DNA of 64,000 bases from Laetmonice hystrix (Eukaryota). The notes beneath the pieces were generated by a model. That model was not told the DNA's origin. It saw nothing but the letters and a program-made list of their open reading frames with translations, and made no database searches. The DNA is taken from contig OZ249438.1 in NCBI GenBank assembly GCA_965235115.1, positions 43,586,001-43,650,000 of the forward strand. Direction: 5' to 3'. Position numbers and translations under genes: made by a program. Below, piece after piece: positions 21,007 to 47,081 of the stretch. Position 1 is the first letter of the stretch. The number at the start of each line of letters is the position of its first letter.

Positions 21007-21136
21007 CCACCGTTTGTTAGCTCGTCGTGTCGTTAACACCAGTGTGTTTTCAATGGGGTGTTTAACGTTCGGTGAGAATGGAACACACCCTGATCAAGGT
21101 TTGAGTGATACCAACGTGGATTACTAGGGGTGTTTA

Positions 21137-27340: not shown

Positions 27341-28230
27341 GGGGATTTCACGTTGATGATCAGGACTGGAAGCCTAGGACTGGACAGGGATTTCACGTTG
27401 ATGATCAGGACTGGAAGCCTAGGACTGGACAGGGATTTCACCTTGACGATCAGGACTGGAAGCCTAGGACTGGACAGGGATTTCACCTTGACGATCAGGA
27501 CTGGAAGCCTAGGACTGGACAGGGATTTCACCTTGACGATCAGGACTGGAAGCCTAGGACTGGACAGGGATTTCACCTTGACGATCAGGACTGGAAGCCT
27601 AGGACTGGACAGGGATTTCACCTTGACGATCAGGACTGGAAGCCTAGGACTGGACAGGGATTTCACCTTGACGATCAGGACTGGAAGCCTAGGACTGGAC
27701 AGGGATTTCACCTTGACGATCAGGACTGGAAGCCTAGGACTGGACAGGGATTTCACCTTGACGATCAGGACTGGAAGCCTAGGACTGGACAGGGATTTCA
27801 CCTTCACGATCAGGAAGCATAGGACTGGACAGGGATTTCACCTTCACGATCAGGACTGGAAGCCTAGGACTGGACAGGGATTTCACCTTCACGATCAGGA
27901 CTGGAAGCCTAGGACTGGGCAGGGATTTCACCTTCACGATCAGGACTGGAAGCCTAGGACTGGACAGGGATTTCACCTTGACGATCAGGACTGGAAGCCT
28001 AGGACTGGACAGGGATTTCACCTTCACGATCAGGACTGGAAGCCTAGGACTGGACAGGGATTTCACCTTGACGATCAGGACTGGAAGCCTAGGACTGGAC
28101 AGGGATTTCACCTTCACGATCAGGAAGCATAGGACTGGACAGGGATTTCACCTTGACGATCAGGACTGGAAGCCTAGGACTGGACAGGGATTTCACCTTC
28201 ACGATCAGGACTGGAAGCCTAGGACTGGAC
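27341..28230. repeat. 45-bp minisatellite, ~20 copies
   Basis: Unit gggatttcaccttgacgatcaggactggaagcctaggactggaca. Confidence 0.97.
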
Positions 28231-28924
28231 CTCCGATATGGAAGGTCGATGTAAAGACGAGCCCACAGTAAGCATAATTTCACAGAAGATGTAAAGAGTA
28301 CGAAGATACGTCAAGGAACAATTCCCCCCTCCCACATTACGATGGCGGGCTGGCATGTCGCAGCAATGATGTAATGTGTCAGGTAGCAGTGAAACCCGCC
28401 CCCCGGAATCAGCATCAAGGAGGACAACACGCCATTAACTGACAGTTTGTGTAGCCTGGTCCCCAGGTCTATATTGACTACGTGAGCCTGGTGAAGGCTA
28501 ATCGAAGCTAACAGTTAGTGCTTCAGTCCACGCATACACGTACTTTCCTCTCGCATTCTCTCGCCCTGGGCTGTGAGCATGACGTTCGCCTTCCGGTTGT
28601 ATGGAGTGGAGCAGGGAATGCTGGGTAGGGTGGTTGGTAGGATGAACTCCGCTTTCGTAGCTTTGTGGGCGACAAGACTGTGAGGCCTTTATGTGTGCGC
28701 AGGGGGGGGGGGGGAGGCAGGACTGTGAGGCCTTTATGTGTGCGCAGGGGGGACATCAAAAGACATCACCTGTCATTTCGTGTTGCCATCAGAGAGCTAT
28801 GACGGCCTGTCTCGTGTCATCTCCCGTCTTTCAATGGTTGCCGTCTCGGAGATACATGCCCTCGTCGTCCTTTCAGCTAGAGCAGCTGTTGCTGGTAGAA
28901 ATATTCACCACTCCTGTCTGCATG

Positions 28925-30590
28925 CCAGTCGGTGTCTCCTGGTGAAAGGTGCCAGTCGGTGTCTCCTGGTGAAAGGTGCCAGTCGGTGTCTCCTGGAGAA
29001 AGGTGCCAGTCGGTGTCTCCTGGTGAAAGGTGCCAGTCGGTGTCGCCTGGAGAAAGGTGCCAGTCGGTGTCGCCTGGAGAAAGGTGCCAGTCGGTGTCTC
29101 CTGGAGAAAGGTGCCAGTCGGTGTCAGGTGCCAGTCGGTGTCTCCTGGAGAAAGGTGCCAGTCGGTGTCTCCTGGAGAAAGGTGCCAGTCGGTGTCTCCT
29201 GGAGAAAGGTGCCAGTCGGTGTCGCCTGGTGAAAGGTGCCAGTCGGTGTCAGGTGCCAGTCGGTGTCGCCTGGAGAAAGGTGCCAGTCGGTGTCGCCTGG
29301 AGAAAGGTGCCAGTCGGTGTCTCCTGGAGAAAGGTGCCAGTCGGTGTCAGGTGCCAGTCGGTGTCTCCTGGAGAAAGGTGCCAGTCGGTGTCGCCTGGTG
29401 AAAGGTGCCAGTCGGTGTCAGGTGCCAGTCGGTGTCTCCTGGAGAAAGGTGCCAGTCGGTGTCGCCAGGAGGAAGGTGCCAGTCGGTGTCTCCTGGAGAA
29501 AGGTGCCAGTCGGTGTCGCCTGGTGAAAGGTGCCAGTCGGTGTCAGGTGCCAGTCGGTGTCGCCAGGAGAAAGGTGCCAGTCGGTGTCGCCAGGAGAAAG
29601 GTGCCAGTCGGTGTCACCTGGTGAAAGGTGCCAGTCGGTGTCAGGTGCCAGTCGGTGTCGCCAGGAGAAAGGTGCCAGTCGGTGTCGCCAGGAGAAAGGT
29701 GCCAGTCGGTGTCGCCTGGAGAAAGGTGCCAGTCGGTGTCACCTGGAGAAAGGTGCCAGTCGGTGTCGCCTGGAGAAAGGTGCCAGTCGGTGTCACCTGG
29801 AGAAAGGTGCCAGTCGGTGTCGCCAGGAGAAAGGTGCCAGTCGGTGTCTCCTGGAGAAAGGTGCCAGTCGGTGTCTCCAGGAGAAAGGTGCCAGTCGGTG
29901 TCGCCTGGAGAAAGGTGCCAGTCGGTGTCTCCTGGAGAAAGGTGCCAGTCGGTGTCTCCTGGAGAAAGGTGCCAGTCGGTGTCTCCTGGAGAAAGGTGCC
30001 AGTCGGTGTCTCCTGGTGAAAGGTGCCAGTCGGTGTCGCCTGGTGAAAGGTGCCAGTCGGTGTCTCCATGAGAAAGGTGCCAGTCGGTGTCTCTTGGAGA
30101 AAGGTGCCAGTCGGTGTCTCCTGGAGAAAGGTGCCAGTCGGTGTCGCCTGGAGAAAGGTGCCAGTCGGTGTCTCCTGGAGAAAGGTGCCAGTCGGTGTCG
30201 CCTGGAGAAAGGTGCCAGTCGGTGTCGCCTGGAGAAAGGTGCCAGTCGGTGTCACCTGGAGAAAGGTGCCAGTCGGTGTCTCCTGGAGAAAGGTGCCAGT
30301 CGGTGTCACCTGGAGAAAGGTGCCAGTCGGTGTCTCCTGGAGAAAGGTGCCAGTCGGTGTCGCCTGGAGAAAGGTGCCAGTCGGTGTCGCCAGGAGAAAG
30401 GTGCCAGTCGGTGTCGCCTGGAGAAAGGTGCCAGTCGGTGTCTCCTGGAGAAAGGTGCCAGTCGGTGTCTCCTGGAGAAAGGTGCCAGTCGGTGTCTCCT
30501 GGAGAAAGGTGCCAGTCGGTGTCGCCTGGAGAAAGGTGCCAGTCGGTGTCGCCTGGAGAAAGGTGCCAGTCGGTGTCGCCAAGAGAAAGA
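28925..30590. repeat. 27-bp minisatellite (17-bp truncated variants), ~60 copies
   Basis: Unit ggtgccagtcggtgtc(t/g/a)cc(t/a)ggagaaa. Confidence 0.98.
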
Positions 30591-30717
30591 TTCCCAACGG
30601 ATTGCAGTTATTTCGGGCCACGGTGCATGTCAAAATGTCCCTTTTATCCCAGATAGGACCTCATGCCCTTTGGAACAGGCCTTGTGATAATATCGTGCAA
30701 AACGTATACTTCTCTTT

Positions 30718-30878
30718 TGATCAGTTTATGAATAGTGTGGATTGTCCACTTCAGGGTGATCAGTTTATGAATAGTGTGGATTGTCCACTTCAGGGTGATC
30801 AGTTTATGAATAGTGTGGATTGTCCACTTCAGGGTGATCAGTTTATGAATAGTGTCGATTGTACACTTCAGGGTGACA
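30718..30878. repeat. 39-bp minisatellite, 4 copies
   Basis: Unit tgatcagtttatgaatagtgtggattgtccacttcaggg. Confidence 0.94.
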
Positions 30879-31047
30879 AAGTTTGCAGAGTGCCCGGCAC
30901 TCCTATGTTGCCTATATTTTTCTTGCTATCCTATGAATTCCCATATTTCGGAAAAATTCAATTCCCGATAAAAGTACTTAATAACTAGGCCTATAAGTGT
31001 GTTTATTTGCAATTTAAGAAGCTACAATGTACTTCGATCGTGCTATA

Positions 31048-31525
31048 CAGGGTGTCTCAAAAAAATGGTAATCCAAAAAGAAAGGGCTTTTGTGACCAGC
31101 TATAGGTAAATTTAGAGAAGATAAATGGCTGAATCATAAAGTACTGTTCATGAGCTTTCCAGTGACACCATCCTGACCTTCCTGTGGTCGCGCATTGCCG
31201 AACTGTGGGGTTTTAAAAATGGGACATCAGAATCCAAAATTTACAACTGGGATATGGTTGAAATTGACACCAAAACAACGCCAAAGATTCGTCAGAGATT
31301 TTATTTACAGAACATGTAACAGCCATAGGCGTGCCAGTTTTACGTAAACCAGATTTGATGCGGGTACAATCTTGCACCATCATTCACGGACCAACCCCTT
31401 CAACATGTCACTGGAAAGCTCATGAACAGTACTTTATGATTCAGCCCTTTATCTTCTCTAAATTTACCTATAGCTGGTCACAAAAGCCCTTTCTTTTTGG
31501 ATTACCATTTTTTTGAGACACCCTG
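31048..31525. mobile_element. Tc1/mariner-type MITE, 478 bp
   Basis: 120-bp TIRs starting cagggtgtctc (31048-31167, 31406-31525) with one mismatch; TA on both flanks. Confidence 0.93.
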
Positions 31526-31764
31526 TAGATCTAATCGCCTATAAAATGACAAAAATTGCTCCTATAGGCCTATATTCCTATAATTTTGTTTTGAACAGTC
31601 CTATATTTCTATAATATTTTTTGTGTAAACTGCTGGGCACCCTGAGTTTGGCTTCATTCCCATTTGTGAGGTTGCGTGTTATATTTCCTTCGGATGTCTC
31701 ATTTACAATTAATCAATAACGTTGTAGCCTTCCTTGACTGCAGTGACGTTTCTAACCATAGCCA

Positions 31765-31819
<55 letters not shown>

Positions 31820-31932
31820 CTCTCTCTCTCTCCCTCGCTCTCTCTATCGCTCTCTCTCCTGTCTTTTTCTCCCTCTACCCGTCTGTCTCGCTGTCGCTGT
31901 CTCTGTCTCTCTCTGTCTCCCCTGTTCTTTCT

Positions 31933-31972
<40 letters not shown>

Positions 31973-32001
31973 ATCTGTGTCTCTCTGTCCGTCTCTCTCT
32001 C
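31765..32001. repeat. (CT)n microsatellite, degenerate; partial paralog at 39589-39711
   Basis: Direct reading. Confidence 0.95.
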
Positions 32002-32009
32002 AGATAATA

Positions 32010-32156
32010 CTATGCTATGACGGACTGAATCTCGGTTCCTTTTCTGATATCGTACTTAGCCTGGGCCCTGGTGTCAGTGAGGGACGTCATTTTGTGAAGA
32101 CCTCGCTGTTAATCTAATCCCCGAGAATCTGTGATAATGTAAGTTATTTCTGTCAT
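32010..32156 (-). pseudogene. Possible decayed SGNH/esterase-like transposon ORF fragment (MTEITYIITDSRGLD*QRGLHK...); paralog at 39715-39861
   Basis: Hydrophobic strand followed by DSRG right after a Met, resembling SGNH block I; in-frame TAA in both copies. Motif resemblance only. Confidence 0.25.
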
Positions 32157-33169
32157 TGTCGGCTGTACGAGTACTCCATCTTGATGTATGAGGTCCGCCA
32201 GGCTCTGTGGACTGAGATAGCACAATCTACATAGCGTCATGAGTCGTTCACATACAGGACTGCCATGGGTTGCCAACTGTAGATATCGTTGGTCTACTGA
32301 TTTAGATATCGGGTTAAGAGGCGACCAATGTACACAGAGCGTAAACTAGGACCGTTTACAGATATTCTAATGGCCACTGAAGGAAACCGATCGAAACTAT
32401 CTGAAGGCGGCTTTAGCAACATCTTCAACTTCAGAGCAGGAGGGCCGTCAATGGAAGTGTTTGCAGGACAAGAACGAAGAGCTGTTGGTGGAGGCTGGCT
32501 CTGGTTGGGATATCTGCTGGTATCCGCCACAGGCAGGCGGGTTGGTGGGTGGGCTGCCCCCCTCCGCCCTCACTCAGTAATAGGATCTACATTTATCGAT
32601 GTTTTATGGATATCCAACTAGTGTCCCAGGTCCGGGAACCGTGTGGGTGGACTAGGTGGACTCTTCAACCAATGAGATCGGAAGAAAAAAAGGACATTTA
32701 TAGGGAACTCTTTGTGGCAGATGTTGGAACTGGTGATAAGCAAACTGTTCGGCCTGAGTTTACACAGGGGAATGAAACAGGAGGGTAAAAGGTCTGACTA
32801 GGGTACTCGCTGTTTCTATGTCACATTCCTCAGACGCTGCGTCCACTCGGTTTCAATGCAAAGCGCTCAGCAATCTATGTTTTGTTGACTTGGAAATTAA
32901 GTTAAGGCACGTATATGGGACAAATTGAATGATAAAGGGGGGATCGGCTGGCAGCGTTCGCCTCCTCCTCATGGCTGCCATTTTCTTGGTCAATGCATTC
33001 GATTCATGGATACATTGGGTGAGAAACATCCCGTAATATTCGGAGGATTAGAGGAAGGCGAGCACATTGCCGCTCATTGAATCCTGTCAGTAAATATAGA
33101 TGCTGTAGAGTTCAGTTATAGAGTTCAGTTATATCCCTAATAATGTAAAAAAGTCCGCATGTGTTTGAG

Positions 33170-33698
33170 CCATCCGATAGACGTTGGGGTTAGCGCCATG
33201 TATCTGAGCATGGCGCCATCCGATAGACGTTGGGGTTAGCGCCATGTATCTGAGCATGGCGCCATCCGATAGACGTTGGGGTTAGCGCCATGTATCTGAG
33301 CATGGCGCCATCCGATAGACGTTGGGGTTAGCGCCATGTATCTGAGCATGGCGCCATCCGATAGACGTTGGGGTTAGCGCCATGTATCTGAGCATGGCGC
33401 CATCCGATAGAGTTTGGGGTTAGCGCCATGTATCACAGCATGGCGCCATCTGATAGAGTTTGGGGTTAGCGCCATGTATCTGAGCATGGCGCCATCTGAT
33501 AGAGTTTGGGGAGCGCCATGTATCTAAGCATGACGCCATCCGATAGAGTTTGGGGTTAGCGCCATGTATCTGAGCATGGCGCCATCCGATAGACGTTGGG
33601 GTTAGCGCCATGTATCTGAGCATGGCGCCATCCGATAGACGTTGGGGTTAGCGCCATGTATCAGAGCATGGCGCCATCTGATAGAGTTTGGGGGTTGG
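33170..33698. repeat. 46-bp minisatellite, ~11.5 copies (duplication copy 1)
   Basis: Unit gccatccgatagacgttggggttagcgccatgtatctgagcatggc. Confidence 0.96.
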
Positions 33699-33718
33699 GG
33701 TAAATTCAGCCTTAGTTG

Positions 33719-34147
33719 CAGAGTATGTGAAAGTGCCAAAATTTCTGCAGGACCTGCGGTCCTGCAGAAGTAACAAGTCTGGGGGACCTACCAGAGTTCT
33801 GTCTGACCTACTGAAATACGTCACTTTTCAAAAATTACACAAAAACGCATGCTCATGAATATAACACGTCTTTATTATGCTGGTGTCATTACCAGGTGCA
33901 ATAGAATAAATGTATAAATAAATAAAAATGTATATCTGTGCTCTGGTTGGCTAAAGGACAGTGTAGTGGAGTCTATTGCATGTAGTGGAGCAGCTTCTCC
34001 TCAATCGATGCCTACTTGGGACTTAGGTGGGTACATAACAGCCAAATGTGTGCGGGACAATCGGGCCTGCTAAATGGGAAGGTCTGTCGGACCGACGGGT
34101 TTTTAGCGGGTCTCGGGCCGTCGGTCCCACGGTGTTCACATACTCTG
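33719..34147. mobile_element. 429-bp non-autonomous TIR element with 6-bp TSD (hAT-like ends)
   Basis: 13-bp TIR cagagtatgtgaa/ttcacatactctg; tagttg duplicated at 33713-33718 and 34148-34153; empty site with a single tagttg in copy 2 near 41466. Confidence 0.92.
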
Positions 34148-35068
34148 TAGTTGATAGTGCTCTGGCTGCAGCCGTGCCCTGACTTGGGTACATTGTCCAC
34201 CGATTTGTAGGCGATTTACTGTCTCAGTGAAATGCACCGACATATTTCAAGGTTTGTCCAAGTCGCTATGCAGACTACATCATGTGTCTACCACGATTTT
34301 TAGATCACAAAAATAAAGTGAGGCATGTGGGTCAAATATGCATTAAGGAACTCGACCACCTTGCTGTTTCTGTTGTCAGTATCAAGCGTTGATGCGGAAA
34401 GAGTACAGCCATGGGGGAACTGTTCCGTTTTAAAATCCTGGGTTATAAAAATTAAACACGGTGAATAGGGATAATTTTTATTGAGAACTTTCAATCAGTT
34501 CTGTGTCAGTGCAGCCCGAGATGTGCCTACTGCAGCGTGATTGTGGCTGATTACCGGCGGAGAACCCTCCTGGGATTTGGCACGTCGATCGACGGGACAC
34601 TTGCATCACATTAGATTACACGTTTTGCTCCTCCGTATTGTCAATTAACATTTTGATGATTGATTCCATGTTTACGGCACCGTGACTACTTCAACTCTAT
34701 AATGGATCGCTGCTGTTACATGGAGCCGGCGCCAAGCTTAAGCAGTTTTAGATTTACTGATGATGGATTAAACCTACCACATCCACCTTTTAATAGATGA
34801 GTGGCGATTAACCAAATGGGCGCACGTATATCTCGAGGAGGGTTGTACTATTAATGCATATTCTGTAACTTGATTTTGAGGCGAGGAAGATTGTATTCAA
34901 AAGGCGTGGGTTTTCTCGGAATTTGTGACGTAAAGTGTTTAGCCCAGTTTGTGAGGTGATGGATGAGACTTGAGTTTGAGCCGTGAGAGAGGGCTGACAG
35001 ACGCCGAGCCGACAGGTGCGTGTAGGCTGCGTCTGTCGGCGCATTAACAACGGTAAGTAGTGATCTGG

Positions 35069-35503
35069 CGTCACACACCTCTCCCCCTCCGCCAGTCACT
35101 AAAACACTTGTCAATAAACACTTAACACTAGCTTCATAACGACACTGGCAAGGTCAAGTCACCTTCAATCACATGCGTCACACCCCCCTCCCCCCTCCTT
35201 CAGTCACTCAACACTTGTCACTAAACACTTAACACTAGCTTCATAACCACACTGGCAAGGTCAGGTCACCTTCAATCACATGCGTCACACACCTCTCCCC
35301 CCTCCGCCAGTCACTAAAACACTTGTCACTAAACACTTAACACTAGCTTCATAACCACACTGGCAAGGTCATGTCACCTTCAATCACATACGTCACACCC
35401 CCCTCCCCCCTCCGCCAGTCACTAAAACACTTGTCACTAAACACTAAACACTTAACACTAGCTTCATAACCACACTGGCAAGGTCAAGTCACTTTCAATC
35501 ACT
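35069..35503. repeat. ~108-bp tandem repeat, 4 copies (single copy in duplication copy 2)
   Basis: gtcacac starts at about 35069, 35177, 35284 and 35392. Confidence 0.92.
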
Positions 35504-35696
35504 CTGGGCTTTCAAACCAAGTACATGGATGCCAACAGGACACTACTATAATCCCACTCAAAAATACGTATAAAATGTCACAACAAATGTATGAGATTTA
35601 TAAGGTTATTGTCCTTGGAGAGGACGCCTTGGGAGAACCCATGACATTATTGAAGTTTTAACTGGGTTTATAACGCCATGTTCTTACTGCGAGCTG

Positions 35697-36414
35697 GGGC
35701 CAGTTTTTAAATCACAGTCTTATGCCTAAGCCAGCGTAAGACTGAGCCTAGTCTTACGTTTCTGTTTTTAAATCAGCTGACAGAGGCTTAGACTTTAAGC
35801 CTAGACTCAGCTTTGTAAGACAAGTGCCGAGCTGGCTTAGCATGCTTCAAATGTCTTTTTCCGAAGATTTAGACAAAATTGTTTCTTCCCATCACTATTC
35901 ATCGAGTTATTTTATATAAAAATCTGATGAGATCAACTTTTACACAGAATAGATTCGTATTAGTTGAAATATGCAACTTGACTACGGACTCGTTTCGCTG
36001 CGTCATCGTCGTTGTTGTGGTTGGCTTGGGCGGAAGTGCAACCTTTGACCTAAGACATGACCTCTGACCCACCTATGACCGATGACCCAGCAATTTTGAC
36101 GTACTCCTTTTTGTTACGTAAATCTAGATTAGCAGAGTCAAAGACAGCATCGCCTGACAGTTAGAGGTTGGCATTAACGAATTCTACGGACTTTTTCACA
36201 TTTTGCCATCACTGGGGCAAAATAATAGCTTTCAAAGATCATTCTACATTCTAATGTGGCGTTTCCATCATGGTGGGATCCGTGTTTTGTCGCCACCAGG
36301 CTTAGACTTACCTAAGCCAGGCAAGCATGCTGATTTAAAAACTGGAATTCAGGCTTAGACTTGGGTAAGTCTAGTCTTAGTCTTACCGAACCCATTTGAT
36401 TTAAAAACCGGCCC
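35697..36414. mobile_element. MITE M1 (PIF/Harbinger-related), ~718 bp
   Basis: TIR gggccagtttttaaatca / tgatttaaaaaccggccc; flanks ctg and cag; internal ctaag/cttag motif repeats. Confidence 0.85.
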
Positions 36415-36417
36415 CAG

Positions 36418-36566
36418 GGCCCCGTCTTACTAAGCCGGCGACATCGCCCGTCAAATGTCGCCAACGTTAAAGCAATGGGGCACGTCGCCAGAACAGGCGA
36501 CATATTACCTTATATGGGCCGGCGACGTCCCATTTGGCGATGTCGCCGGCTTAGTAAGACGGGCTC
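36418..36566. mobile_element. MITE M2 (PIF/Harbinger-related), ~149 bp
   Basis: About 30-bp TIR with core cccgtcttactaagccggcgacatcgcc; cag on both flanks; gtcgcc/ggcgac subterminal motifs. Confidence 0.85.
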
Positions 36567-36572
36567 CAGCTG

Positions 36573-37263
36573 GGCCCGGTTCCGTTGTCTACCTCTTTCC
36601 GTGAGCTGAGATGTTGTGAGCTGAGCAGCAGTTTCCTGCTTACGTGAGCAGTGCTCACCGTGAGCAGTAAATCGGGTTCCTTTGTTCACCCTGAGCACTT
36701 GCTCACATGAGCACTTGCTCACGGTGAGCAAGACACCGTAACTATGGATATATGACGTAACAGTTTATTGTCATCACTCAGATATGATGACGTCACAATA
36801 CTTTTGGAACTGTTCTAGATACAACAATAGGGCCTCATTTCTAACGTCACAATAACGCGTGTGCCTGTGGCCACAGTGTGAAACTGCCATGGGACAGAGT
36901 GGACACTGTCAGAGTAATTTTAGCAACAGGCTGCTCTAGAAATCCTTTTTAATTTCAGAAACGATATTTGCAGGCTTCTGGAGAACAACATTCTGCTCCC
37001 CGTGGTCAAAATAAGTAAAAGAAAGGAAGAAAAAAAATATGTAAATTTGAGTGAAATTCTCCCTTGCTCACGCTTGCTCACGACACCGTGAGCATCCTCC
37101 TTAGCTTGCTCAAGTTTCACGGCAATTTCGTGAGCAAAGCTCACGGTGAGCACTGCTCACAGTACACAAAGGAACCGGTGGACCGTGAGCAGCTCACGAA
37201 AAGTGCTGCTCAGCTCACGAAAATGCTGCTCAGCTCACGAAAATTGCACAACGGAACCGGGCC
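36573..37263. mobile_element. MITE M3 (PIF/Harbinger-related), ~691 bp
   Basis: Perfect TIR ggcccggttccgttgt / acaacggaaccgggcc; ctg on both flanks; dense gtgagc/gctcac subterminal repeats. Confidence 0.88.
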
Positions 37264-37266
37264 CTG

Positions 37267-37420
37267 GGCCCGGTTTCTCGAAAATACTTAAGTCTGAGTT
37301 TCACTCAACTTTACTCAACTCAGGAAATGGAGGATTCACATTGGCTAAAAACGTTCTTTTGAGTAGATTTGAGTGAAACTCAGACTTAAGTATACTTAAG
37401 TATGTTCGAGAAATCGGCCC
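37267..37420. mobile_element. MITE M4 (PIF/Harbinger-related), ~154 bp
   Basis: Imperfect 27-bp TIR ggcccggtttctcgaaaatacttaagt / acttaagtatgttcgagaaatcggccc; left flank ctg, right flank not matching. Confidence 0.78.
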
Positions 37421-38660
37421 TTAAGTATCTTCAATCTGTAGCAGGCTTCATGGCAATGAGGTCGATCCGTTTGAGATCGGAAGGCAGCCCCACCAATTAA
37501 ACGATTGGTACAAAAACGGAGGTAAAGGGCAGGGCACTGACTGACTTTAAGGGGGATGACACTAGGCCGGTGGTGGCAGCTGTCAAAGTGCATCATGGAC
37601 TTGCCGCATAACTCGCGCAATTTATGCCAACTCAGCTTGCTGGGGTTGATTTGAGCTTGGACTTAAATTGACTTGAACTTAGGGTAGAGGTGATGACAGA
37701 ATGAGTCGCCGGGTTAGCTTCCCCGACATTAACTGACGCGCTCTCCTCGTGTATTTGATCAAATCTAGGCAAATCCGACAAGGCAGGAACACAATACAAA
37801 CTACGTTAACGTCCTGTTGTGTTAGACGTGTCTAGACGTTGTAGTGTTGTGTTAGACGTGTCTAGACGTTATAGTTTTGTGTTAGACGTGTCTAGACGTT
37901 GTAGTACCGTTACTTATTTGAAGGGTGTGTCAGTAAAAATAAGAGCTAGCTGTGAGAAAGTATACAACACGCCGGTTTGATTGGTGCATGGCGTGAGAGA
38001 TGGTGTTTCTGATGACACCGCCGAGGGACAGGGGAAACGCGAGGAATGGGGAGGTTTATAACACCTGTGACCTCACAGAATGGTCACAGTAAGGTTGGGT
38101 ATGTATTACTGCATGTTCAGCTTGGCAACAATATTATCACAGATATAGCTTAGTCTGACAAGCTGAAACCTTATGCGAAAAATGGAAAAACTAAATTATA
38201 CTTGTCGTCACGCATCACAAAAGTCAGAGTTGATCGAAAAATGAAATATATAATGATAATCTGTGTGATAGTGTTCTGACCGTTCATATTGGCCTTCTAC
38301 TGGTGTTCTAACCGCCTGTATGATTGTGCTCTGATGTCTGGAGGGTAAAGTCTAGCCTTGCCTGGTTCCCACTAGGCCCTATATCGTACCATTCCCATGT
38401 GACAGTTGGTCCCCAGACATCAGTGAAAGTAGTATGTGAAAAGTAACGGTTATATCAGGCTACGACTGGAACTGCTCGACCAATCAGGGGAGCTGACAGT
38501 TAAACTTTCATTGAGAGGCAATCTCAGTTAACCCCCTTTTGATAGGGTAGTTTTCTGGGGACCTTTCCCATTTATCGTGTTACTGTGAACTAGCATCTCA
38601 TCACCTGTCAACAGGAGTATTTATATACCCATAGACGAGATCTCACCGCCACTGGCTTCA

Positions 38661-38864
38661 GACATTCGTCCCAAGGTAGACATGTATCATCTAGTGGTTT
38701 CTAGTCGTTAAGACATTCGTCCCAAGGTAGACATGTATCGTCTAGTGGTTTCTAGTCGTTAAGACATTCGTCCCAAGGTAGACATGTATCGTCTAGTGGT
38801 TTCTAGTCGTTAAGACATTCGTCCTAAGGTAGACATGTATCGTCTAGTGGTTTCTAGTCGTTAA
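38661..38864. repeat. 51-bp minisatellite, 4 copies (copy 1)
   Basis: Unit gacattcgtcccaaggtagacatgtatc(a/g)tctagtggtttctagtcgttaa. Confidence 0.95.
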
Positions 38865-39027
38865 AATCTCACAATTTGTTTCCATTGCAGAAGTTTTTAT
38901 GGGGGATTGTATAATGATTATCAAATTGTTACTTCTTGCGATACGGGTTTAAATACCACAAGGGCCTATGGCAGATCGTGGCCTTATAGGGTCAGACCCA
39001 AGTTTACAAATCCTGTTCATTGTGTGA

Positions 39028-39588
39028 CCAAACAATTAAATGTCTTGATACAGTAGGATGTTTCTGTGTCTCAGAATGCATTCTTAATATGTGAACAAAC
39101 AATCAAATATCTTGATACAGTAGGATGTTTCTGTGTGTCAGAATGCATTCTTAATATGTGAACAAACAATCAAATATCTTGATACAGTAGGATGTTTCTG
39201 TGTCTCAGAATGCATTCTTATGTGAACAAACAATCAAATATCTTGATACAGTAGGATGTTTCTGTGTCTCAGAATGCATTCTTAATATGTGAACAAACAA
39301 TCAAATATCTTGATACAGTAGGATGTTTCTGTGTCTCAGAATGCATTCTTATGTGAACAAACAATCAAATATCTTGATACAGTAGGATGTTTCTGTGTCT
39401 CAGAATGCATTCTTAATATGTGAACAAACAATCAAATATCTTGATACAGTAGGATGATTCTGTGTCTCAGAATGCATTCTTAATATGTGAACAAACAATC
39501 AAATATCTTGATACAGTAGGATGTTTCTGTGTCTCAGAATGCATTCTTAATATGTGAACAAACAATCAAATATCTTGATACAGTAGGA
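39028..39588. repeat. 64/67-bp minisatellite, ~8.5 copies (copy 1)
   Basis: Unit tgtgaacaaacaatcaaatatcttgatacagtaggatgtttctgtgtctcagaatgcattctta(ata). Confidence 0.95.
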
Positions 39589-40879
39589 TTCTCCCTCTAC
39601 CCGTCGGTCTCTCTGTCGATGTCTCTGTCTCTCTCTGTCTCCCCCGGTCTCTTTCTCCCTTCCTCTCTCCCTGTCTCTCTCTATCTGTGTCTCTCTGCCC
39701 CTCTCTCTCTCATACTATGCTATGACGGGCTGAATCTCGGTTCCTTTTTTGATATCGTACTTAGCCTGGGCCCTGGTGTCAGTCAGGGACTTCATTTTGT
39801 GAAGACCTCGCTGTTAATCTAATCCCCGAGAATCTGTGATAATGTAAGTTATTTCTGTCATTGGCGGCTGTACGAGTACTCCATCTTGATGTATGAGGTC
39901 CGCCAGGCTCTGTGGACTGAGATAGCACAATCTACATAGCGTCATGAGTCGTTCACATACAGGACCGCCATGGGTTGCCAACTGTAGATATCGTTGGTCT
40001 ACTGATTTAGATATCGGGTTGAGAGGCGACCAATGTACACAGAGCGTAAACTAGGACCGTTTACAGATATTCTAATAGCCACTGAAGGAAACCGGTCGAA
40101 ACTATCTGAAGGCGGCTTTAGCAACATCTTCAACTTCAGAGCAGGAGGGCCGTCAATGGAAGTGTTTGCAGGACAAGACCGGAGAGATGTTGGCGGAGGC
40201 TGGCTCTGGTTGGGATATCTGCTGGTATCCGCCACAGGCAGGCGGGTTGGTGGGTGGGCTGCCCCCCTCCGCCCTCACTCAGTAATAGGATCTACATTTA
40301 TCGATGTTTTATGGATATCCAACTAGTGTCCCAGGTCCGAGAACCGTGTGGGTGGACTAGGTGGACTCTTCAACCAATGAGATCGGAAGAAAAAAAAGGA
40401 CATTCATAGGGAACTCTTTGTGGCAGATGTTGCCTCGGAACTGGTGATAAGCAAACTGTTCGGCCTGAGTTTACCCAGGGGAATGAAACAGGAGGGTAAA
40501 AGGTCTGCCTAGGGTACTCGCTGTTTCTATGTCACATTCCTCAGACGCTGCGTCCACTCGGTTTCAATGCAAAGCGCTCAGCAATCTATGTTTTGTTGAC
40601 TTGGAAATTAAGTTAAGGCACGTATATGGGACAAATTGAATGATAAAGGGGGGATCGGCTGGCAGCGTTCGCCTCCTCCCGATGGCTGCCATTTTCTTGG
40701 TCAATGCATTCGATTCATGGATACATTGGGTGAGAAACATCCCGTAATATTCGGAGGATTAGAGGAAGGCGAGCACATTGCCACTCATTGAATCCTGTCA
40801 GTAAATATAGATGCTGCAGAGTTCAGTTATAGAGTTCAGTTATATCCCTAATAATGTAAAAAAGTCCGCATGTGTCTGA

Positions 40880-41447
40880 GCCATCCGATAGACGTTGGGG
40901 TTAGCGCCATGTATCTGAGCATGGCGCCATCTGATAGAGTTTGGGGTTAGCGCCATGTATCTGAGCATGGCGCCATCCGATAGAGTTTGGGGTTAGCGCC
41001 ATGTATCTGAGTATGGCGCCATCTGATAGAGTTTGGGGTTAGCGCCATGTATCTGAGCATGGCGCCATCTGATAGAGTTTGGGGTTAGCGCCATGTATCT
41101 GAGCATGGCGCCATCCGATAGCGTTTGGGGTTTGCGCCATGTATCAGAGCATGGCGCCATCCGATAGAGTTTGGGGTTGGCGCCATGTATCACAGCATGG
41201 CGCCATCCGATAGAGTTTGGGGTTAGCGCCATGTATCACAGCATGGCGCCATCCGATAGAGTTTGGGGTTGGCGCCATGTATGAGTATGACGCCATCCGA
41301 TAGAGTTTGGGGTTAGCGCCATGTATGAGTATGACGCCATCCGATAGAGTTTGGGGTTGGCGCCATGTATCAGAGCATGGCGCCATCCGATAGAGTTTGG
41401 GGTTGGCGCCATGTATCAGCATGGCGCCATCTGATAGAGTTTGGGAG
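40880..41447. repeat. 46-bp minisatellite, ~12 copies (copy 2)
   Basis: Same unit as 33170-33698 with a different variant pattern. Confidence 0.96.
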
Positions 41448-43088
41448 TTGGGGTAAATTCAGCCTTAGTTGAGAGTGCTCTGGCTGCAGCCGTGCCCTGA
41501 CTTGGTACGTTGTCCACCGATTTGTAGGCGATTTACTGTCTCGGTGCAATGCACCGACATATTTCAAGGTTTGTCCAAGTCGCTATGCAGACTACATCAT
41601 GTGTCTACCACGATTTCTAGATCACAAAAATAAAGTGAGGCATGTGGGTCAAATATGCATTAAGGAACTCGACCACCTTGCTGTTTCTGTTGTCAGTATC
41701 AAGCGTTGATGCGGAAAGAGTACAGCCATGGGGGAACTGTTCCGTTTTAAAATCCTGGGTTATAAAAATTAAACACGGTGAATAGGGATAATTTTTATTG
41801 AGAACTTTCAATCAGTTCTGTGTCAGTGCAGCCCGAGATGTGCCTACTGCAGCGTGATTGTGGCTGATTACCGGCGGAGAACCCTCCTGGGATTTGGCAC
41901 GTCGATCGACGGGACACTTGCATCACATTAGATTACACGTTTTGCTCCTCCGTATTGTCAATTAACATTTTGATGATTGATTCCATGTTTACGGCACCGT
42001 GACTACTTCCACTCTATAATGGATCGCTGCTGTTACATGGAGCCGGCACCAAGCTTAAGCAGTTTTAGATTTACTGATGATGGATTAAACCTACCACATC
42101 CACCTTTTAATAGATGAGTGGCGATTAACCAAATGGGCGCACGTATATCTCGAGGAGGGTTGCACTATTAATGCATATTCTGTAACTTGATTTTGAGGCG
42201 AGGAAGATTGTATTCAAAAGGCGTGGGTTTTCTCGGAATTTGTGACGTAAAGTGTTTAGCCCAGTTTGTGATGTGATGGATGAGACTTGAGTTTGAGCCG
42301 TGAGAGAGGGCTGACAGACGCCGAGCCGACAGGTGCGTGTAGGCTGCGTCTGTCAGCGCATTAACCACGGTAAGTAGTGATCTGGCGTCACACACCCCTC
42401 CCCCCTCCGCCAGTCACTAAAACACTTGTCACTAAACACTTAACACTAGCGTCATAACCACACTGGCAAGGTCAGGTCACCTTCAATCACTCTGGGCTTT
42501 CAAACCAAGTACATTTAATGGATGCCAACAGGACACTACTATAATCCCACCCAAAAAACGTATAAAATGTCACAACAAATTTATGAGATTTATAAGGTTC
42601 TTGTCCTTGGAGAGGACGCCTTGGGAGAACCCATGACATTATTGAAGTTTTAACTGGGTTTATAACGCCATGTTCTTACTGCGAGCTGGTATCTTCAATC
42701 TTCAATCTGTAGCAGGCTTCATGGCAATGAGGTAGATCCGTTTGAGATCGGAAGGCAGCCCCACCAATTAAACGATTGTTACAAAAACGGAGGTAAAGGG
42801 CAGGGCACTGACTGACGTTAAGGGGGATGACACGAGGCCGGTGGTGGCAGCTGTCAAAGTGCATCATGGACTTGCCGCATAACTCGCGCAATTTATGCCA
42901 ACTCAGCGTGCTGGGGTTGATTTGAGCTTGGACTTAAATTGACTTGAACTTAGGGTAGAGGTGATGACAGAATGAGTCGCCGGGTTAGCTTCCCCGACAT
43001 TAACTGACGCGCTCTCCTCGTGTATTTGATCAAATCTAGGCAAATCCGACGAAGCAGGAACACAATACAAACTACGTTAAAGTCCTCT

Positions 43089-44409
43089 TGTGTTAGACAT
43101 GTCTAGACGTTGTAGTGTTGTGTTAGACGTGTCTAGACGTTGTAGTGTTGTGTTAGACGTGTCTAGACGTTGTAGTGTTGTGTTAGACGTGTCTAGACGT
43201 TGTAGTGTTGTGTTAGACGTGTCTAGACGTTGTAGTTTTGTGTTAGACGTGTCTAGACGTTGTAACGTTGTGTTAGACGTGTCTAGACGTTGTAGTGTTG
43301 TGTTAGACGTGTCTAGACGTTGTAGTGTTGTGTTAGACGTGTCTAGACGTTGTAGTGTTGTGTTAGACGTGTCTAGACGTTGTAGTGTTGTGTTAGACGT
43401 TGTAGTGTTGTGTTAGACGTGTCTAGACGTTGTAGTGTTGTGTTAGACGTGTCTAGACGTTGTAGTGTTGTGTTAGACGTTGTAGTGTTGTGTTAGACGT
43501 GTCTAGACGTTGTAGTGTTGTGTTAGACGTTGTAGTGTTGTGTTAGACGTGTCTAGACGTTGTAGTGTTGTGTTAGACGTTGTAGTGTTGTGTTAGACGT
43601 GTCTAGACGTTGTAGTGTTGTGTTAGACGTTGTAGCGTTGTGTTAGACGTGTCTAGACGTTGTAGTGTTGTGTTAGACGTGTCTAGACGTTGTAGTGTTG
43701 TGTTAGACGTTGTAGTGTTGTGTTAGACGTGTCTAGACGTTGTAGTGTTGTGTTAGACGTGTCTAGACGTTGTAGTTTTGTGTTAGACGTGTCTAGACGT
43801 TGTAGTGTTGTGTTAGACGTGTCTAGACGTTGTAGTGTTGTGTTAGACGTTGTAGTTTTGTGTTAGACGTGTCTAGACGTTGTAGTGTTGTGTTAGACGT
43901 TGTAGTTTTGTGTTAGACGTGTCTAGACGTTGTAGTGTTGTGTTAGACGTGTCTAGACGTTGTAGTGTTGTGTTAGACGTGTCTAGACGTTGTAGTGTTG
44001 TGTTAGACGTGTCTAGACGTTGTAGTGTTGTGTTAGACGTGTCTAGACGTTGTAGTGTTGTGTTAGACGTGTCTAGACGTTGTAGTGTTGTGTTAGACGT
44101 GTCTAGACGTTGTAGTGTTGTGTTAGACGTGTCTAGACGTTGTAGTGTTGTGTTAGACGTGTCTAGACGTTTTAGTTTTGTGTTAGACGTGTCTATACGT
44201 TGTAGTGTTGTGTTAGACGTATCTAGACGTTGTAGTGTTGTGTTAGACGTGTCTAGACGTTGTAGTTAGACGTGTCTAGACGTTGTAGTGTTGTGTTAGA
44301 CGTGTCTAGACGTTGTAGTGTTGTGTTAGACGTGTCTAGACGTTGTAGTGTTGTGTTAGACGTGTCTAGACGTTGTAGTTTTGTGTTAGACGTGTCTAGA
44401 CGTTGTAGT
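43089..44409. repeat. 30-bp minisatellite (20-bp variants), ~46 copies; only ~3 copies at the paralogous site 37819-37906
   Basis: Unit gtgttgtgttagacgtgtctagacgttgta. Confidence 0.97.
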
Positions 44410-45176
44410 ACCGTTACTTATTTGAAGGGTGTGTCAGTAAAAATAAGAGCTAGCTGTGAGAAAGTATACAACACGCCGGTTTTATTGGTGCATGGCGTGA
44501 GAGATGGTGTTTCTGATGACACCGCCGAGGGATATGGAATGGGGAGGTTTATAACACCTGTGACCTCACAGAATGGCCACAGTAAGGTTGGGTATTTATT
44601 AGTGCATGTTCAGCTTGGCATGTTGGGTATTTATTAGTGCATGTTCAGCTTGGCAACAATATTAACACAGATATAGCTTAGTCTGACAAGCCGAAATGCG
44701 AAAAATGGAAAAACTAAATTATACTTGTCGTCACGCATCGCAAAAGTCAGAGTTGATCGAAAAATGAAATATATAATGATAATCTGTGTGATAGTGTTCT
44801 GACCGTTCATATTGGCCTTCTACTGGTGTTCTAACCGCCTGTATGATTGTGCTCTGATGTCTGGAGGGTAAAGTCTAGCCTTGCCTGGTTCCCACTATAT
44901 CGTACCATTCCCATGTGACAGTTGGTCCCCAGACATCAGTGAAAGTAGTATGTGAAAAGTAACGGTTATATCAGGCTACGACTGGAACCGCTCGACCAAT
45001 CAGAGGATCTGACAGTTAAACTTTCATTGAGAGGCAATCTCAGTTAACCCCCTTTTGATAGGGTAGTTTTCTGGGGACCTTTCCCATTTATCGTGTTACT
45101 GTGAACTAGCATCTCATCACCTGTCAACAGGAGTATTTATATACCCATAGACGAGATCTCACCGCCACTGGCTTCA

Positions 45177-45685
45177 GACATTCGTCCCAAGGTAGACATG
45201 TATCATCTAGTGGTTTCTAGTCGTTAAGACATTCGTCCCAAGGTAGACATGTATCATCTAGTGGTTTCTAGTCGTTAAGACATTCGTCCCAAGGTAGACA
45301 TGTATCATCTAGTGGTTTCTAGTCGTTAAGACATTCGTCCCAAGGTAGACATGTATCGTCTAGTGGTTTCTAGTCGTTAAGACATTCGTCCCAAGGTAGA
45401 CATGTATCGTCTAGTGGTTTCTAGTCGTTAAGACATTCGTCCTAAGGTAGACATGTCTCATCTAGTGGTTTCTAGTCGTTAAGACATTCGTCCCAAGGTA
45501 GACATGTATCATCTAGTGGTTTCTAGTCGTTAAGACATTCGTCCCAAGGTAGACATGTATCATCTAGTGGTTTCTAGTCGTTAAGACATTCGTCCCAAGG
45601 TAGACATGTATCGTCTAGTGGTTTCTAGTCGTTAAGACATTCGTCCTAAGGTAGACATGTATCGTCTAGTGGTTTCTAGTCGTTA
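45177..45685. repeat. 51-bp minisatellite, 10 copies (copy 2)
   Basis: Same unit as 38661-38864. Confidence 0.96.
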
Positions 45686-45842
45686 GAATCTCACAATTTG
45701 TTTCCATTGCAGAAGTTTTTATGGGGGATTGTATAATGATTATCAAATTGTTACTTCTTGCGATACGGGTTTAAATACCACAAGGGCCTATGGCAGATCG
45801 TGGCCTTATAGGGTCAGACCCAAGTTTACAAATCCTGTTCAT

Positions 45843-47081
45843 TGTGTGAACAAACAATCAAATATCTTGATACAGTAGGATGTTTCTGTGTCTCAGAATG
45901 CATTCTTATGTGAACAAACAATCAAATATCTTGATACAGTAGGATGATTCTGTGTCTCAGAATGCATTCTTAATATGTGAACAAACAATCAAATATCTTG
46001 ATACAGTAGGATGTTTCTGTGTCTCAGAATGCATTCTTAATATGTGAACAAACAATCAAATATCTTGATACAGTAGGATGATTCTGTGTCTCAGAATGCA
46101 TTCTTAATATGTGAACAAACAATCAAATATCTTGATACAGTAGGATGATTCTGTGTCTCAGAATGCATTCTTAATATGTGAACAAACAATCAAATATCTT
46201 GATACAGTAGGATGTTTCTGTGTCTCAGAATGCATTCTTAATATGTGAACAAACAATCAAATATCTTGATACAGTAGGATGTTTCTGTGTCTCAGAATGC
46301 ATTCTTATGTGAACAAACAATCAAATATCTTGATACAGTAGGATGTTTCTGTGTCTCAGAATGCATTCTTATGTAAACAAACAATGAAATATCTTGATAC
46401 AGTAGGATGTTTCTGTGTCTCAGAATGCATTCTTAATATGTGAACAAACAATCAAATATCTTGATACAGTAGGATGTTTCTGTGTCTCAGAATGCATTCT
46501 TATGTGAACAAACAGTCAAATATCTTGATACAGTAGGATGTTTCTGTGTCTCAGAATGCATTCTTATGTGAACAAACAATCAAATATCTTGATACAGTAG
46601 GATGTTTCTGTGTCTCAGAATGCATTCTTAATATGTGAACAAACAATCAAATATCTTGATACAGTAGGATGTTTCTGTGTCTCAGAATGCATTCTTATGT
46701 GAACAAATAATCAAATATCTTGATACAGTAGGATGTTTCTGTGTCTCAGAATGCATTCTTATGTGAACAAACAATCAAATATCTTGATACAATAGGATGT
46801 TTCTGTGTCTCAGAATGCATTCTTATGTGAACAAACAATCAAATATCTTGATACAGTAGGATGTTTCTGTGTCTCAGAATGCATTCTTATGTGAACAAAC
46901 AATCAAATATCTTGATACAGTAGGATGTTTCTGTGTCTCAGAATGCATTCTTATGTTAACAAACAATCAAATATCTTGATACAGTAGGATGTTTCTGTGT
47001 CTCAGAATGCATTCTTATGTGAACAAACAATCAAATATCTTGATACAGTAGGATGTTTCTGTGTCTCAGAATGCATTCTTA
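45843..47081. repeat. 64/67-bp minisatellite, ~19 copies (copy 2)
   Basis: Same unit as 39028-39588. Confidence 0.96.

What the first reader, a model, noticed from the sequence alone, without database searches (positions are those of the whole stretch)
35694..37424. Train of four different MITEs abutting end to end at CWG triplets
Seen: ctg-M1(718)-cag-M2(149)-cagctg-M3(691)-ctg-M4(154)-ttaa. The four elements have unrelated interiors, each with its own subterminal motif, but similar GG(G/C)CC-type ends. None is nested inside another; they are separated by only 3 or 6 bp. The whole 1.73 kb is absent from duplication copy 2 (gagctg|gtatc near 42688). Known: PIF/Harbinger-related elements make 3-bp TSDs, and CWG targets are described for the NuwaI group. 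Inference: successive insertions targeted the TSD next to an existing related end, implying transposase-guided self-targeting that builds composite arrays. The outer ends of M1 and M4 might also let the train move as one unit.
Basis: partly seen in the sequence, partly recalled or inferred. Interest (0 to 1): 0.78.

Follow-up and report, generated by a model that had tools for sequence, protein, structure and literature searches.

The report
Four different MITEs inserted end-to-end
Four unrelated small non-coding transposons with similar ends sit end to end at one 3-base target in one copy of a recent duplication. This is most likely repeated insertion into a preferred target that each insertion duplicates, a neat multi-family case of a known process.

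Summary
At 35694-37424 four TIR elements (718, 149, 691 and 153/154 bp) abut, separated only by CWG triplets. Their interiors are unrelated and their ends are similar (GGSCC-R/C-GT).

- **Separate families.** Contigs from four public runs of one sample show each element is its own high-copy family.
- **Empty site.** The 1,728 bp are missing from the sister copy of a 7.7-kb tandem duplication (GAGCTG|GTATC). That empty form is also present in the contigs.
- **Family type.** M2 (CAG/CAG) and M3 (CTG/CTG) have clean CWG duplications, as in the NuwaI group of PIF/Harbinger-like transposons.
- **Irregularities.** M1 has inverted flanks (CTG...CAG). There are six triplets where serial reuse predicts five. 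M4's right end is damaged (CTT-AA).

The best explanation is serial insertion into one preferred triplet that every insertion duplicates. This is "double insertion", already known for P elements and MITE multimers, here with four families.

Active self-targeting and movement of the train as a unit are not shown. Typical M4 copies are solitary, in AC-CWG-GT-like targets. Genome-wide adjacency could not be tested with these tools. Two other unchecked notes of this scan report inverted CWG flanks on other DNA of this genome.

The parts
35694..35696 (.). CTG, left flank of the train; the only CTG of the empty site GAG-CTG-GTATC
35697..36414 (.). M1, a 718-bp non-autonomous element. Its TIR is GGGCC(A/G)GTTTTTAAATCA. 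The 14-nt motif CWGTTTTTAAATCA occurs terminally and about 65 nt inside at both ends. Its flanks are CTG...CAG (inverted, not direct).
   Evidence: (I7, I10, I14, D10, D13). Multi-copy family: contigs of other copies, 84-97% alike, break at 36417/36418.
36415..36417 (.). CAG, shared by M1's right end and M2's left end; left copy of M2's TSD
36418..36566 (.). M2, a 149-bp MITE. Its TIR is GGCCCCGTCTTACTAAG..., with 28-nt perfect arms. The right terminus reads GGGCTC where the family has GGGGCC. It has a direct CAG/CAG TSD.
   Evidence: (I3). Family right end plus CAG comes from loose ends at 36563. Depth is 350-700 times that of the flanks.
36567..36572 (.). CAG (right TSD copy of M2) followed by CTG (left TSD copy of M3): the 6-bp spacer, one triplet more than serial TSD reuse predicts
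36573..37263 (.). M3, a 691-bp non-autonomous element. Its TIR is GGCCCGGTTCCGTTGT, 16 nt (the 17-nt, 100% arms of I11 count one flanking base at each end). It carries many subterminal GTGAGC/GCTCAC repeats and has a direct CTG/CTG TSD.
   Evidence: (I11, I4-I6, D1, D3, D6, D9). Another copy, 98% alike, breaks at 36572.
37264..37266 (.). CTG, shared by M3's right end and M4's left end
37267..37419 (.). Its TIR is GGCCCG(G/A)TTTCTCGAA. This copy has a 10-bp internal tandem duplication (37385-37404) and has lost one G of the right TIR.
   Evidence: (I1, I2, I25). In each large run, 31-41 contigs leave the left end at 37266/67, and 13-16 in X1 and X2 leave the right end at 37417, into unrelated flanks. 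The family right end is ...CGGGCC + CWG + GT.
37420..37424 (.). CTT-AA where CTG-G is expected. This damaged right-hand triplet creates another CTTAAGTAT motif like those inside M4.
   Evidence: (D12)
42683..42694 (.). Paralogous empty site GAGCTG|GTATCT in copy 2 of the tandem duplication, with no footprint
   Evidence: The same joint is seen in contigs of three runs (joint 35697->37427).
31867..47081 (.). Tandem duplication of a unit of about 7.7 kb (31867-39589 and 39589-47081), with 2.5% mismatches in aligned blocks; it frames the timing of the insertions

Best explanation
The 1.73 kb is a multimer of four different non-autonomous transposons (MITEs). All are of the CWG-targeting, GGSCC-ended kind described as the NuwaI group of the PIF/Harbinger-ISL2EU-Spy superfamily. 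Their similar termini suggest the same or closely related transposases mobilise them.

They arrived one after another at a single preferred target, ...GAG-CTG-GTA..., in copy 1. This most likely happened after the local tandem duplication.

Each insertion duplicates the 3-bp target, and the elements begin with G and end with C. Both new triplets therefore keep the core C-CWG-G, and the right-hand one also keeps the original GT half-site. One good target becomes two, and later insertions land exactly against a resident end.

**Shown**
- Four separate multi-copy families.
- The empty paralogous site.
- Direct CWG duplications of M2 and M3.
- M2's use of a CAG that exists only next to M1.

**Inferred**
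- The order of events: M1 before M2; M3 and M4 in either order.
- The shared transposase.
- The timing of insertion after the duplication.
- M1 came in with one extra CAG at its right end.
- M4's right junction was later damaged by error-prone, locally templated repair.
For: - **Anatomy and TIRs:**
- **No shared interiors:**
- **Separate families:** depth steps and loose ends fall exactly at the element boundaries, with heterogeneous flanks for M4 copies.
- **Empty site:** seen in copy 2 and in the contigs.
- **History check:** removing M4, M3 and M2, each with one TSD copy, gives GAG-CTG-[M1]-CAG-CTG-GTATC. Removing M1+CAG then gives the empty site exactly.
- **Target preference:** M4 flank consensus in other copies is (G)AC-CWG-GT(C), and the local site has CTG-GTA.
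- **Family definition:** NuwaI has a CWG TSD, TIRs mostly starting GGG, and occurs in animals.
- **Known mechanism:** double insertion at a duplicated preferred target gives tandem TEs with the target kept in the junction. MITE multimers and adjacent insertions are common in rice and maize.
- **Against independent random hits:** uniform use of the 222 CWG sites in copy 1 would put three later insertions against the train with probability about 2e-6.
- **Recent MITE activity:** another MITE (33719-34147) also entered copy 1 after the duplication.
- **No coding capacity:**
Against: - There are six triplets for four elements; serial reuse predicts five.
- M1's flanks are CTG...CAG, not a direct repeat.
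- The outer right flank is CTT-AA, not CTG.
- All read evidence comes from one sample, which may be the assembly's own source. These are contigs that break at repeats, so no contig shown bridges an internal junction. The only contig laid on the left flank (35510-35697) in X1-X3 is copy 2's.
- The direction of change, insertion in copy 1 versus loss from copy 2, has no outgroup.
- The target logo rests on run-level consensus strings with only 0.4-0.5 overall agreement.
Confidence: 0.6

Rival explanations
1. Active self-targeting. The transposase, or its Myb-like partner, bound to resident ends or subterminal motifs directs new insertions to the triplet next to a related end. Trains would then form far more often than target sequence alone predicts.
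For: There are three junctions in a row, involving four families with similar ends. Internal junction triplets (CC-CWG-GG) match only the core of the M4 target consensus, yet were used. Unchecked notes of this scan mention self-insertions of MITEs elsewhere in the genome.
Against: The consensus flanks of M4 copies are AC-CWG-GT, not GGCC-CWG-GGCC, so most copies do not abut a related end. Passive target duplication already explains tandem insertions in other systems. No enrichment test could be run.
Confidence: 0.15
2. The train is older than the duplication and was lost from copy 2 in one step. That step would be excision as a composite, using M1's left end and M4's right end with precise repair, or a clean deletion.
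For: Copy 2 has a clean single CTG with no footprint. PIF/Harbinger MITEs such as mPing are known to excise precisely (my own knowledge, not checked here). This needs fewer events after the duplication. The damage at M4's outer end would fit failed cuts there.
Against: - The parts compared are 97-99.5% like other family copies. That is similar to the 2.5% divergence of the duplication, so the insertions are about as young as the duplication.
- The outer flanks in copy 1 are not a TSD.
- Composite excision of 1.7 kb with four internal pairs of competing ends is unlikely.
- Another footprint-like site in the window keeps both triplets plus GGCC, so excision in this group does not look precise.
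Confidence: 0.1
3. The train, or the pair M1-CAG-M2, was assembled elsewhere and arrived as a block. The route would be composite transposition or capture as filler DNA during break repair.
For: There is an extra CAG on the right of M1/M2, and a non-TSD right junction whose CTTAAGTAT looks templated from inside M4. Both are marks of irregular joining.
Against: Block arrival still needs the same anomalies. M3 and M2 have perfect local TSDs that fit stepwise growth from the local CTG. Depth differs about 20-fold among members, and M4's flanks elsewhere are heterogeneous, so no abundant block exists.
Confidence: 0.08
4. It is one element with internal inverted repeats, or an assembly artefact.
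For: No contig shown bridges an internal junction.
Against: Depth changes stepwise at each proposed boundary. Other copies of each part end at those boundaries and continue into unrelated DNA. Each part has its own TIR pair.
Confidence: 0.02

Closest known systems
NuwaI group of the PHIS (PIF/Harbinger-ISL2EU-Spy) transposon superfamily (Han et al. 2015, PMC4482050)
   Same: It has a 3-bp CWG target duplication confirmed by paralogous empty sites, TIRs of 12-61 bp that mostly begin GGG, and animal hosts. Here, M2 and M3 have exact CWG duplications, and all ends read (G)GGSCC.
   Different: Only non-autonomous copies are seen here; no DDE or Myb/SANT partner was found. M2-M4 begin GGC unless the TSD's G is counted. 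M1's flanks are inverted (CTG...CAG). The paper did not survey MITEs or report multimers.
Tandem TE dimers by double insertion at one preferred, duplicated target (McGurk & Barbash 2018, PMC5932611; P element, hobo, R1)
   Same: A copy of the target site is kept in every junction. The dimers arise because insertion preserves and duplicates a preferred target, and they form quickly while the elements are active.
   Different: Those dimers are two copies of one family. Here, four different families share one site, giving a chain of four. One junction holds two triplets, and the triplets are not all identical.
MITE multimers and adjacent or nested Tourist/Stowaway insertions in maize and rice (Jiang & Wessler 2001, as summarised in PMC5172404)
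   Same: MITEs often land in or beside other MITEs by independent insertions; more than 10% of rice MITEs are in multimers.
   Different: Most of those cases are nested inside the resident element at AT-rich targets (TA, TWA). Here nothing is nested; every junction lies exactly at the terminal triplet. The original paper could not be read here.
Strong extended target preference of PIF (maize r locus; Walker et al. 1997, cited in PMC4482050; details from my own knowledge)
   Same: A short palindromic target extends beyond the 3-bp duplication and leads to repeated independent insertions at the same nucleotide. The M4 flanks suggest AC-CWG-GT.
   Different: The core is different (TTA in PIF, CWG here). 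The logo here is only a rough consensus from contig ends.
Spy elements (PHIS) and piggyBac, as comparison for the odd flanks (my own knowledge plus PMC4482050)
   Same: Spy inserts in the middle of a palindrome without duplication, so its flanks are inverted. piggyBac carries the flanking TTAA as overhangs. Either could give inverted or hybrid flanks like M1's CTG...CAG.
   Different: M2 and M3 here have ordinary direct duplications, and the empty site has no CTG-CAG palindrome. Neither model fits the whole train.

Membership tests
NuwaI group (PHIS superfamily) | Direct 3-bp CWG target site duplication | tested here: met
   M2 has CAG/CAG and M3 has CTG/CTG. Family-level flanks of M4 and M2 copies read CWG next to the GGCC end.
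NuwaI group (PHIS superfamily) | The same direct CWG duplication on M1 and M4 | tested here: not met
   M1 has CTG...CAG and M4 has CTG...CTT(AA). Other M1 copies also show CTG on the left (one copy) and CAG on the right (two copies).
NuwaI group (PHIS superfamily) | TIRs of 12-61 bp, usually starting GGG | tested here: inconclusive
   TIR lengths are 16-55 nt. M1 starts GGG. M2-M4 start GGC, and read GGG only if the last base of the triplet is counted.
NuwaI group (PHIS superfamily) | Autonomous partner with a DDE transposase and a Myb/SANT ORF sharing the TIRs | not testable with these tools
   There is no coding capacity in M1-M4. No such gene was seen among the window's long ORFs. The rest of the genome cannot be searched here.
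NuwaI group (PHIS superfamily) | Paralogous empty site confirming the duplication | tested here: inconclusive
   The empty site GAG-CTG-GTATC exists. The filled site as a whole is flanked by CTG...CTT-AA, and one extra CAG is present.
MITE | Short, with TIRs, and non-coding | tested here: met
   Lengths are 149-718 bp with TIRs. The longest stop-free stretch is 84 aa, with no Pfam match.
MITE | High copy number, with copies in unrelated flanks | tested here: met
   1,312-1,473 contigs were laid per large run. Depth is 45-1,600 times that of the flanks. In each large run, 31-41 contigs leave M4 into different flanks.
Double-insertion tandem (McGurk & Barbash) | A copy of the target site kept in each junction | tested here: met
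   The junctions are CAG, CAG-CTG and CTG.
Double-insertion tandem (McGurk & Barbash) | All junction copies identical to the outer duplication, with n+1 copies for n elements | tested here: not met
   There are six triplets for four elements. Two are CAG while the site is CTG, and the last is CTT.
Composite transposon (train moving as a unit) | One duplication flanking the outer ends | tested here: not met
   The outer flanks are CTG on the left and CTT-AA on the right.
Composite transposon (train moving as a unit) | Further copies of the same ordered block | not testable with these tools
   There is none in the window. Contigs break at repeats. The depths of the members differ about 20-fold, and M4's flanks elsewhere are unrelated.

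The most novel reading that the evidence does not exclude
The GGCC-ended CWG elements of this genome do not make their flanks by gap filling. Instead they carry the donor site's triplet as a 3-nt overhang and join it to the cut target by base pairing at the outer C and G, in a piggyBac-like way.

Flanks would then be hybrids of donor and target. They could disagree at the central base (M1: CTG...CAG), and a donor triplet could occasionally be kept in full (the extra CAG). Triplets lying against resident ends would be especially good 'sticky' targets, so that trains are built actively.

Two unchecked notes of this scan, on other DNA of the same genome, report the same inverted flanks.
Probability: 0.1. 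Interest if true: 0.7.

Novelty: new member of a known kind. Interest (0 to 1): 0.4.

Why it matters
This locus is a clean natural record of how a transposon's own target duplication can seed clusters. It has an empty sister site, four datable families and exact junctions.

If such chains are common, they would help explain how MITE-rich invertebrate genomes build composite repeats, fold-back structures and minisatellite seeds at hot spots.

The irregular triplets are the more interesting part: inverted flanks, one extra triplet, and damaged outer ends. If they recur genome-wide, they bear on the still unknown cleavage and joining chemistry of CWG-targeting PIF/Harbinger-like transposases.

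As it stands, the finding adds new MITE families and a four-family example to a known mechanism.

Tried and rejected
- **Other copies in the window:** none for M1-M4 (BLAST word 9). TIR 12-mers with one mismatch gave only two chance-like hits, at 10721 and 52180, which do not look like element ends.
- **Metagenome scan:** a scan of JGI metagenome contigs with M4's 19-nt terminus gave six loci. All are bare 18-24-nt matches with nothing else of M4, so they are chance hits.
- **Fetching other copies through translated ORFs:** the 69-aa frame spanning M1/M2/M3 found no protein. The 63-aa ATG ORF across the M1/M2 junction is not on record on any contig. This organism's repeats are evidently not in those collections, so I did not spend the other protein searches.
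- **Literature search for the four TIR strings:** no paper.
- **Rfam on the whole window:** nothing.
- **Pfam on long ORFs of the window and on all stop-free stretches of the train:** nothing meaningful.
- **Jiang & Wessler 2001:** not held.
- **Model: triplets belong to the TIR and there is no duplication (Spy-like).** It fits M1 at this empty site but fails for M2, M3 and M4.
- **Model: a 5-bp AGCTG duplication for M1.** It is formally equivalent at this locus, but it makes the element asymmetric and has no precedent in the superfamily.
- **Model: a fifth element excised between M2 and M3, leaving CAG-CTG.** This is possible but needs two ad hoc events.
- **Alternative parse of M2's right end** (GCC replaced by CTCCAG, giving five triplets).
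Full report
**1. What is in the sequence**

In order it holds:
- CTG (35694-96)
- M1 (35697-36414, 718 bp)
- CAG
- M2 (36418-36566, 149 bp)
- CAG-CTG
- M3 (36573-37263, 691 bp)
- CTG
- M4 (37267-37420)
- TTAA
- GTATC...

Each part has its own pair of terminal inverted repeats:
- M1: 21 nt at 95% if the flanking triplets are counted.
- M2: 28 nt, perfect.
- M3: 17 nt, perfect.
- M4: 55 nt at 71%, with a 35-nt core at 94%.

Each part also has its own subterminal repeats:
- M1: the 14-nt motif CWGTTTTTAAATCA, twice at each end.
- M2: GCCGGCGAC.
- M3: many GTGAGC/GCTCAC units.
- M4: ACTTAAGT.

BLAST of each part against the whole window finds no similarity between the parts beyond their ends, and no second copy in the 64 kb. 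Read inward, the eight termini share G-G-(G/C)-C-C-(A/G/C)-G-T. The longest stop-free stretch is 84 aa, and none has a Pfam match.

**2. The parts are separate mobile families**

Contigs of four public runs were laid on 35510-37900 at 80% likeness. All four runs come from one sample, which may be the sample the assembly was made from.

Summed contig depth in the large runs:

| Region | Depth |
|---|---|
| Both flanks | about 57 |
| M1 | about 3,000-11,000 |
| M2 | 20,000-40,000 |
| M3 | 2,600-11,000 |
| M4 | 60,000-92,000 |

The steps fall at the outer ends of the train. The tool warns that depth is not a copy number, so I use it only to say 'many copies, in different numbers'.

The loose ends say more:
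- In each of the three large runs, 31-41 contigs align to M4 up to 37266/37267 and then continue into unrelated sequence.
- 13-16 contigs in X1 and X2 do the same at M4's right end (37417).
- Other copies of M1 stop at 36417/36418, of M2 at 36563, and of M3 at 36572.

This rules out the idea that the 1.73 kb is one element with internal repeats.

The loose ends also give the family termini:
- M4 ends ...CGGGCC and is followed by CAG, CTG or CTA, then GT.
- M2 ends ...GACGGGGCC and is followed by CAG.

Compared with these, the window's M4 has lost one G of its right repeat, and the window's M2 has two changed bases in its last three (GGGCTC).

**3. The empty site**

The window contains a tandem duplication of about 7.7 kb (31867-39589 and 39589-47081), with 2.5% mismatches in the aligned blocks. 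The minisatellites inside it have changed length, as another note on this window says.

Copy 2 reads GCGAG-CTG-GTATCTTCAAT at 42680-42699, with nothing between CTG and GTATC and no footprint. Contigs in three runs carry exactly this form (joint 35697->37427 with the extra TATCTTCA of copy 2). The difference is 1,728 bp.

A second MITE is also present only in copy 1. It lies at 33719-34147, is 429 bp long, and has the TIR CAGAGTATGTGAA and a 6-bp duplication TAGTTG. MITEs have therefore been moving since the duplication.

Where the listed contigs allow a comparison, segments of M1 and M3 are 97-99.5% like other family copies. They are thus about as young as the duplication.

**4. Reconstructing the history**

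M2 is flanked by CAG and CAG, and M3 by CTG and CTG. These are ordinary 3-bp direct duplications.

- Taking out M4, M3 and M2, each with one copy of its triplet, leaves GAG-CTG-[M1]-CAG-CTG-GTATC.
- The empty site is GAG-CTG-GTATC.
- So M1 together with one CAG is what was added. Equally, CTG-M1-CAG was added with no duplication at all.

M1's flanks, CTG on the left and CAG on the right, are reverse complements of each other and not a duplication. The train holds six triplets where simple reuse of one duplicated target predicts five.

The empty site has no CAG. M2 can therefore only have entered the CAG that lies against M1's end, which places M1 before M2. M3 and M4 share one CTG, so one of them entered the other's flanking triplet. 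The order of those two, and of M1 against M3, is open.

At the right end one expects ...CGGGCC-CTG-GTATC. The sequence reads ...CGG-CC-CTT-AA-GTATC. This creates one more copy of the motif CTTAAGTAT, which M4 already carries twice just inside as a 10-bp tandem duplication at 37385-37404. Three lesions within 40 nt of M4's outer end look like error-prone, locally templated repair of a break there. That is an inference.

**5. Why the same spot**

The consensus of the flanks of other M4 copies is (G)AC-CWG-GT(C), a short palindrome around the triplet. Overall agreement of those strings is only 0.4-0.5, so this is a rough logo.
- The local site has CTG-GTA.
- A footprint-like CTG-GGCC-CTG-GT at 32061 and 39766 has the same right half.

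The elements begin with G and end with C. Each insertion therefore leaves two triplets that both keep the core C-CWG-G, and the right-hand one also keeps GT. One target becomes two.

This is the double-insertion mechanism shown for P elements, hobo and R1 by McGurk and Barbash. There, the target copy is kept in the junction, and site preference is the main cause of tandems. It also matches the frequent MITE multimers of rice and maize.

With uniform use of the 222 CWG sites of copy 1, three later insertions would all touch the train with probability about 2e-6. Strong site preference or active targeting is therefore needed.

The data here do not require active targeting. The M4 consensus flanks are AC...GT, not GGCC...GGCC, so typical copies are solitary.

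**6. Relation to known families**

Han et al. define NuwaI by the CWG duplication, TIRs mostly beginning GGG, a DDE transposase plus a Myb/SANT ORF, and animal hosts.
- M2 and M3 meet the duplication test.
- The TIR start is GGG only for M1, or for all four if the triplet's G is counted.
- The coding partner cannot be looked for with these tools.

I therefore call them NuwaI-like MITEs. None of the four TIR strings occurs in the searchable literature.

**7. What stays unexplained**

These items remain open:
- M1's inverted flanks.
- The extra triplet.
- The changed last bases of M2.
- The damaged end of M4.

Two other first-stage notes on other DNA of this genome report 'flanks that disagree at the central base (5 of 6 copies)' and 'GGCC-ended MITEs flanked by inverted CAG...CTG rather than a duplicated target'. 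They are unchecked, but M1 here is a third instance.

The three other M1-family ends visible also read CTG on the left (one copy) and CAG on the right (two copies). With so few copies this is only a hint.

A joining mechanism that carries the donor's triplet as an overhang would explain such flanks. I give it about one chance in ten.

**8. Limits**
- All read evidence is from one sample and consists of contigs that break at repeats. No listed contig bridges an internal junction.
- In the three large runs, the only contig on the left flank carries copy 2's variants. Reference-like depth is visible on the right flank (position 37546).
- Genome-wide copies could not be fetched. A metagenome scan gave only chance matches. 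Protein-based look-ups gave nothing.
- The key test, adjacency above background, was therefore not run.

**9. Verdict**

- Serial insertion against resident ends: yes.
- Guided self-targeting and unit mobility: not shown.

It is a new, tidy, four-family member of a known kind of event. The irregular flanks are worth a genome-wide count.

Noticed in passing
window 33713-34153 (empty site near 41462-41476): A 429-bp MITE (33719-34147) with the 13-nt TIR CAGAGTATGTGAA and a 6-bp duplication TAGTTG. It is present only in copy 1 of the tandem duplication; copy 2 has the clean empty site. It belongs to a different superfamily from the train (perhaps hAT-like) and shows recent MITE activity.
   Followed up: partly
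window 32061-32073 and 39766-39778: CTG-GGCC-CTG-GT in both duplication copies. It looks like an excision footprint of a GGCC-ended CWG element: both triplets kept, plus two bases from each end. About 0.1 such 10-mers are expected by chance per window.
   Followed up: partly
window 37385-37424: Three lesions are clustered at M4's outer end: a 10-bp tandem duplication ACTTAAGTAT, one G lost from the TIR, and the flanking CTG-G turned into CTT-AA-G. The last change creates a further CTTAAGTAT motif and suggests templated repair of a break at the element end.
   Followed up: partly
window 35701-35775 and 36331-36410: M1 carries the 14-nt motif CWGTTTTTAAATCA four times, terminal and about 65 nt inside at each end. 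The inner pair is itself bordered by CTG...CTG (35762-64, 36342-44). It is either a set of subterminal binding sites or an old nested element.
   Followed up: no
window 35510-35697: In the three large runs, the only contig laid on the left flank carries copy 2's variants (35589 T; 35608 C or G). Copy 1's own left flank is not seen, whereas its right flank is (reference-like depth at 37546). This may be a filter effect, or a hint that the filled copy is heterozygous.
   Followed up: no
window 3806-3860: A 48-bp stretch beginning GGCCGG and ending GGCCC, flanked by CAG and CAG. It may be a strongly deleted remnant of a CWG element.
   Followed up: no
whole window: A very high density of minisatellite arrays (for example 5193-10000, 21808-25177, 28923-30589, 59577-61064), and no recognisable gene, tRNA or Rfam family in 64 kb.
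   Followed up: no
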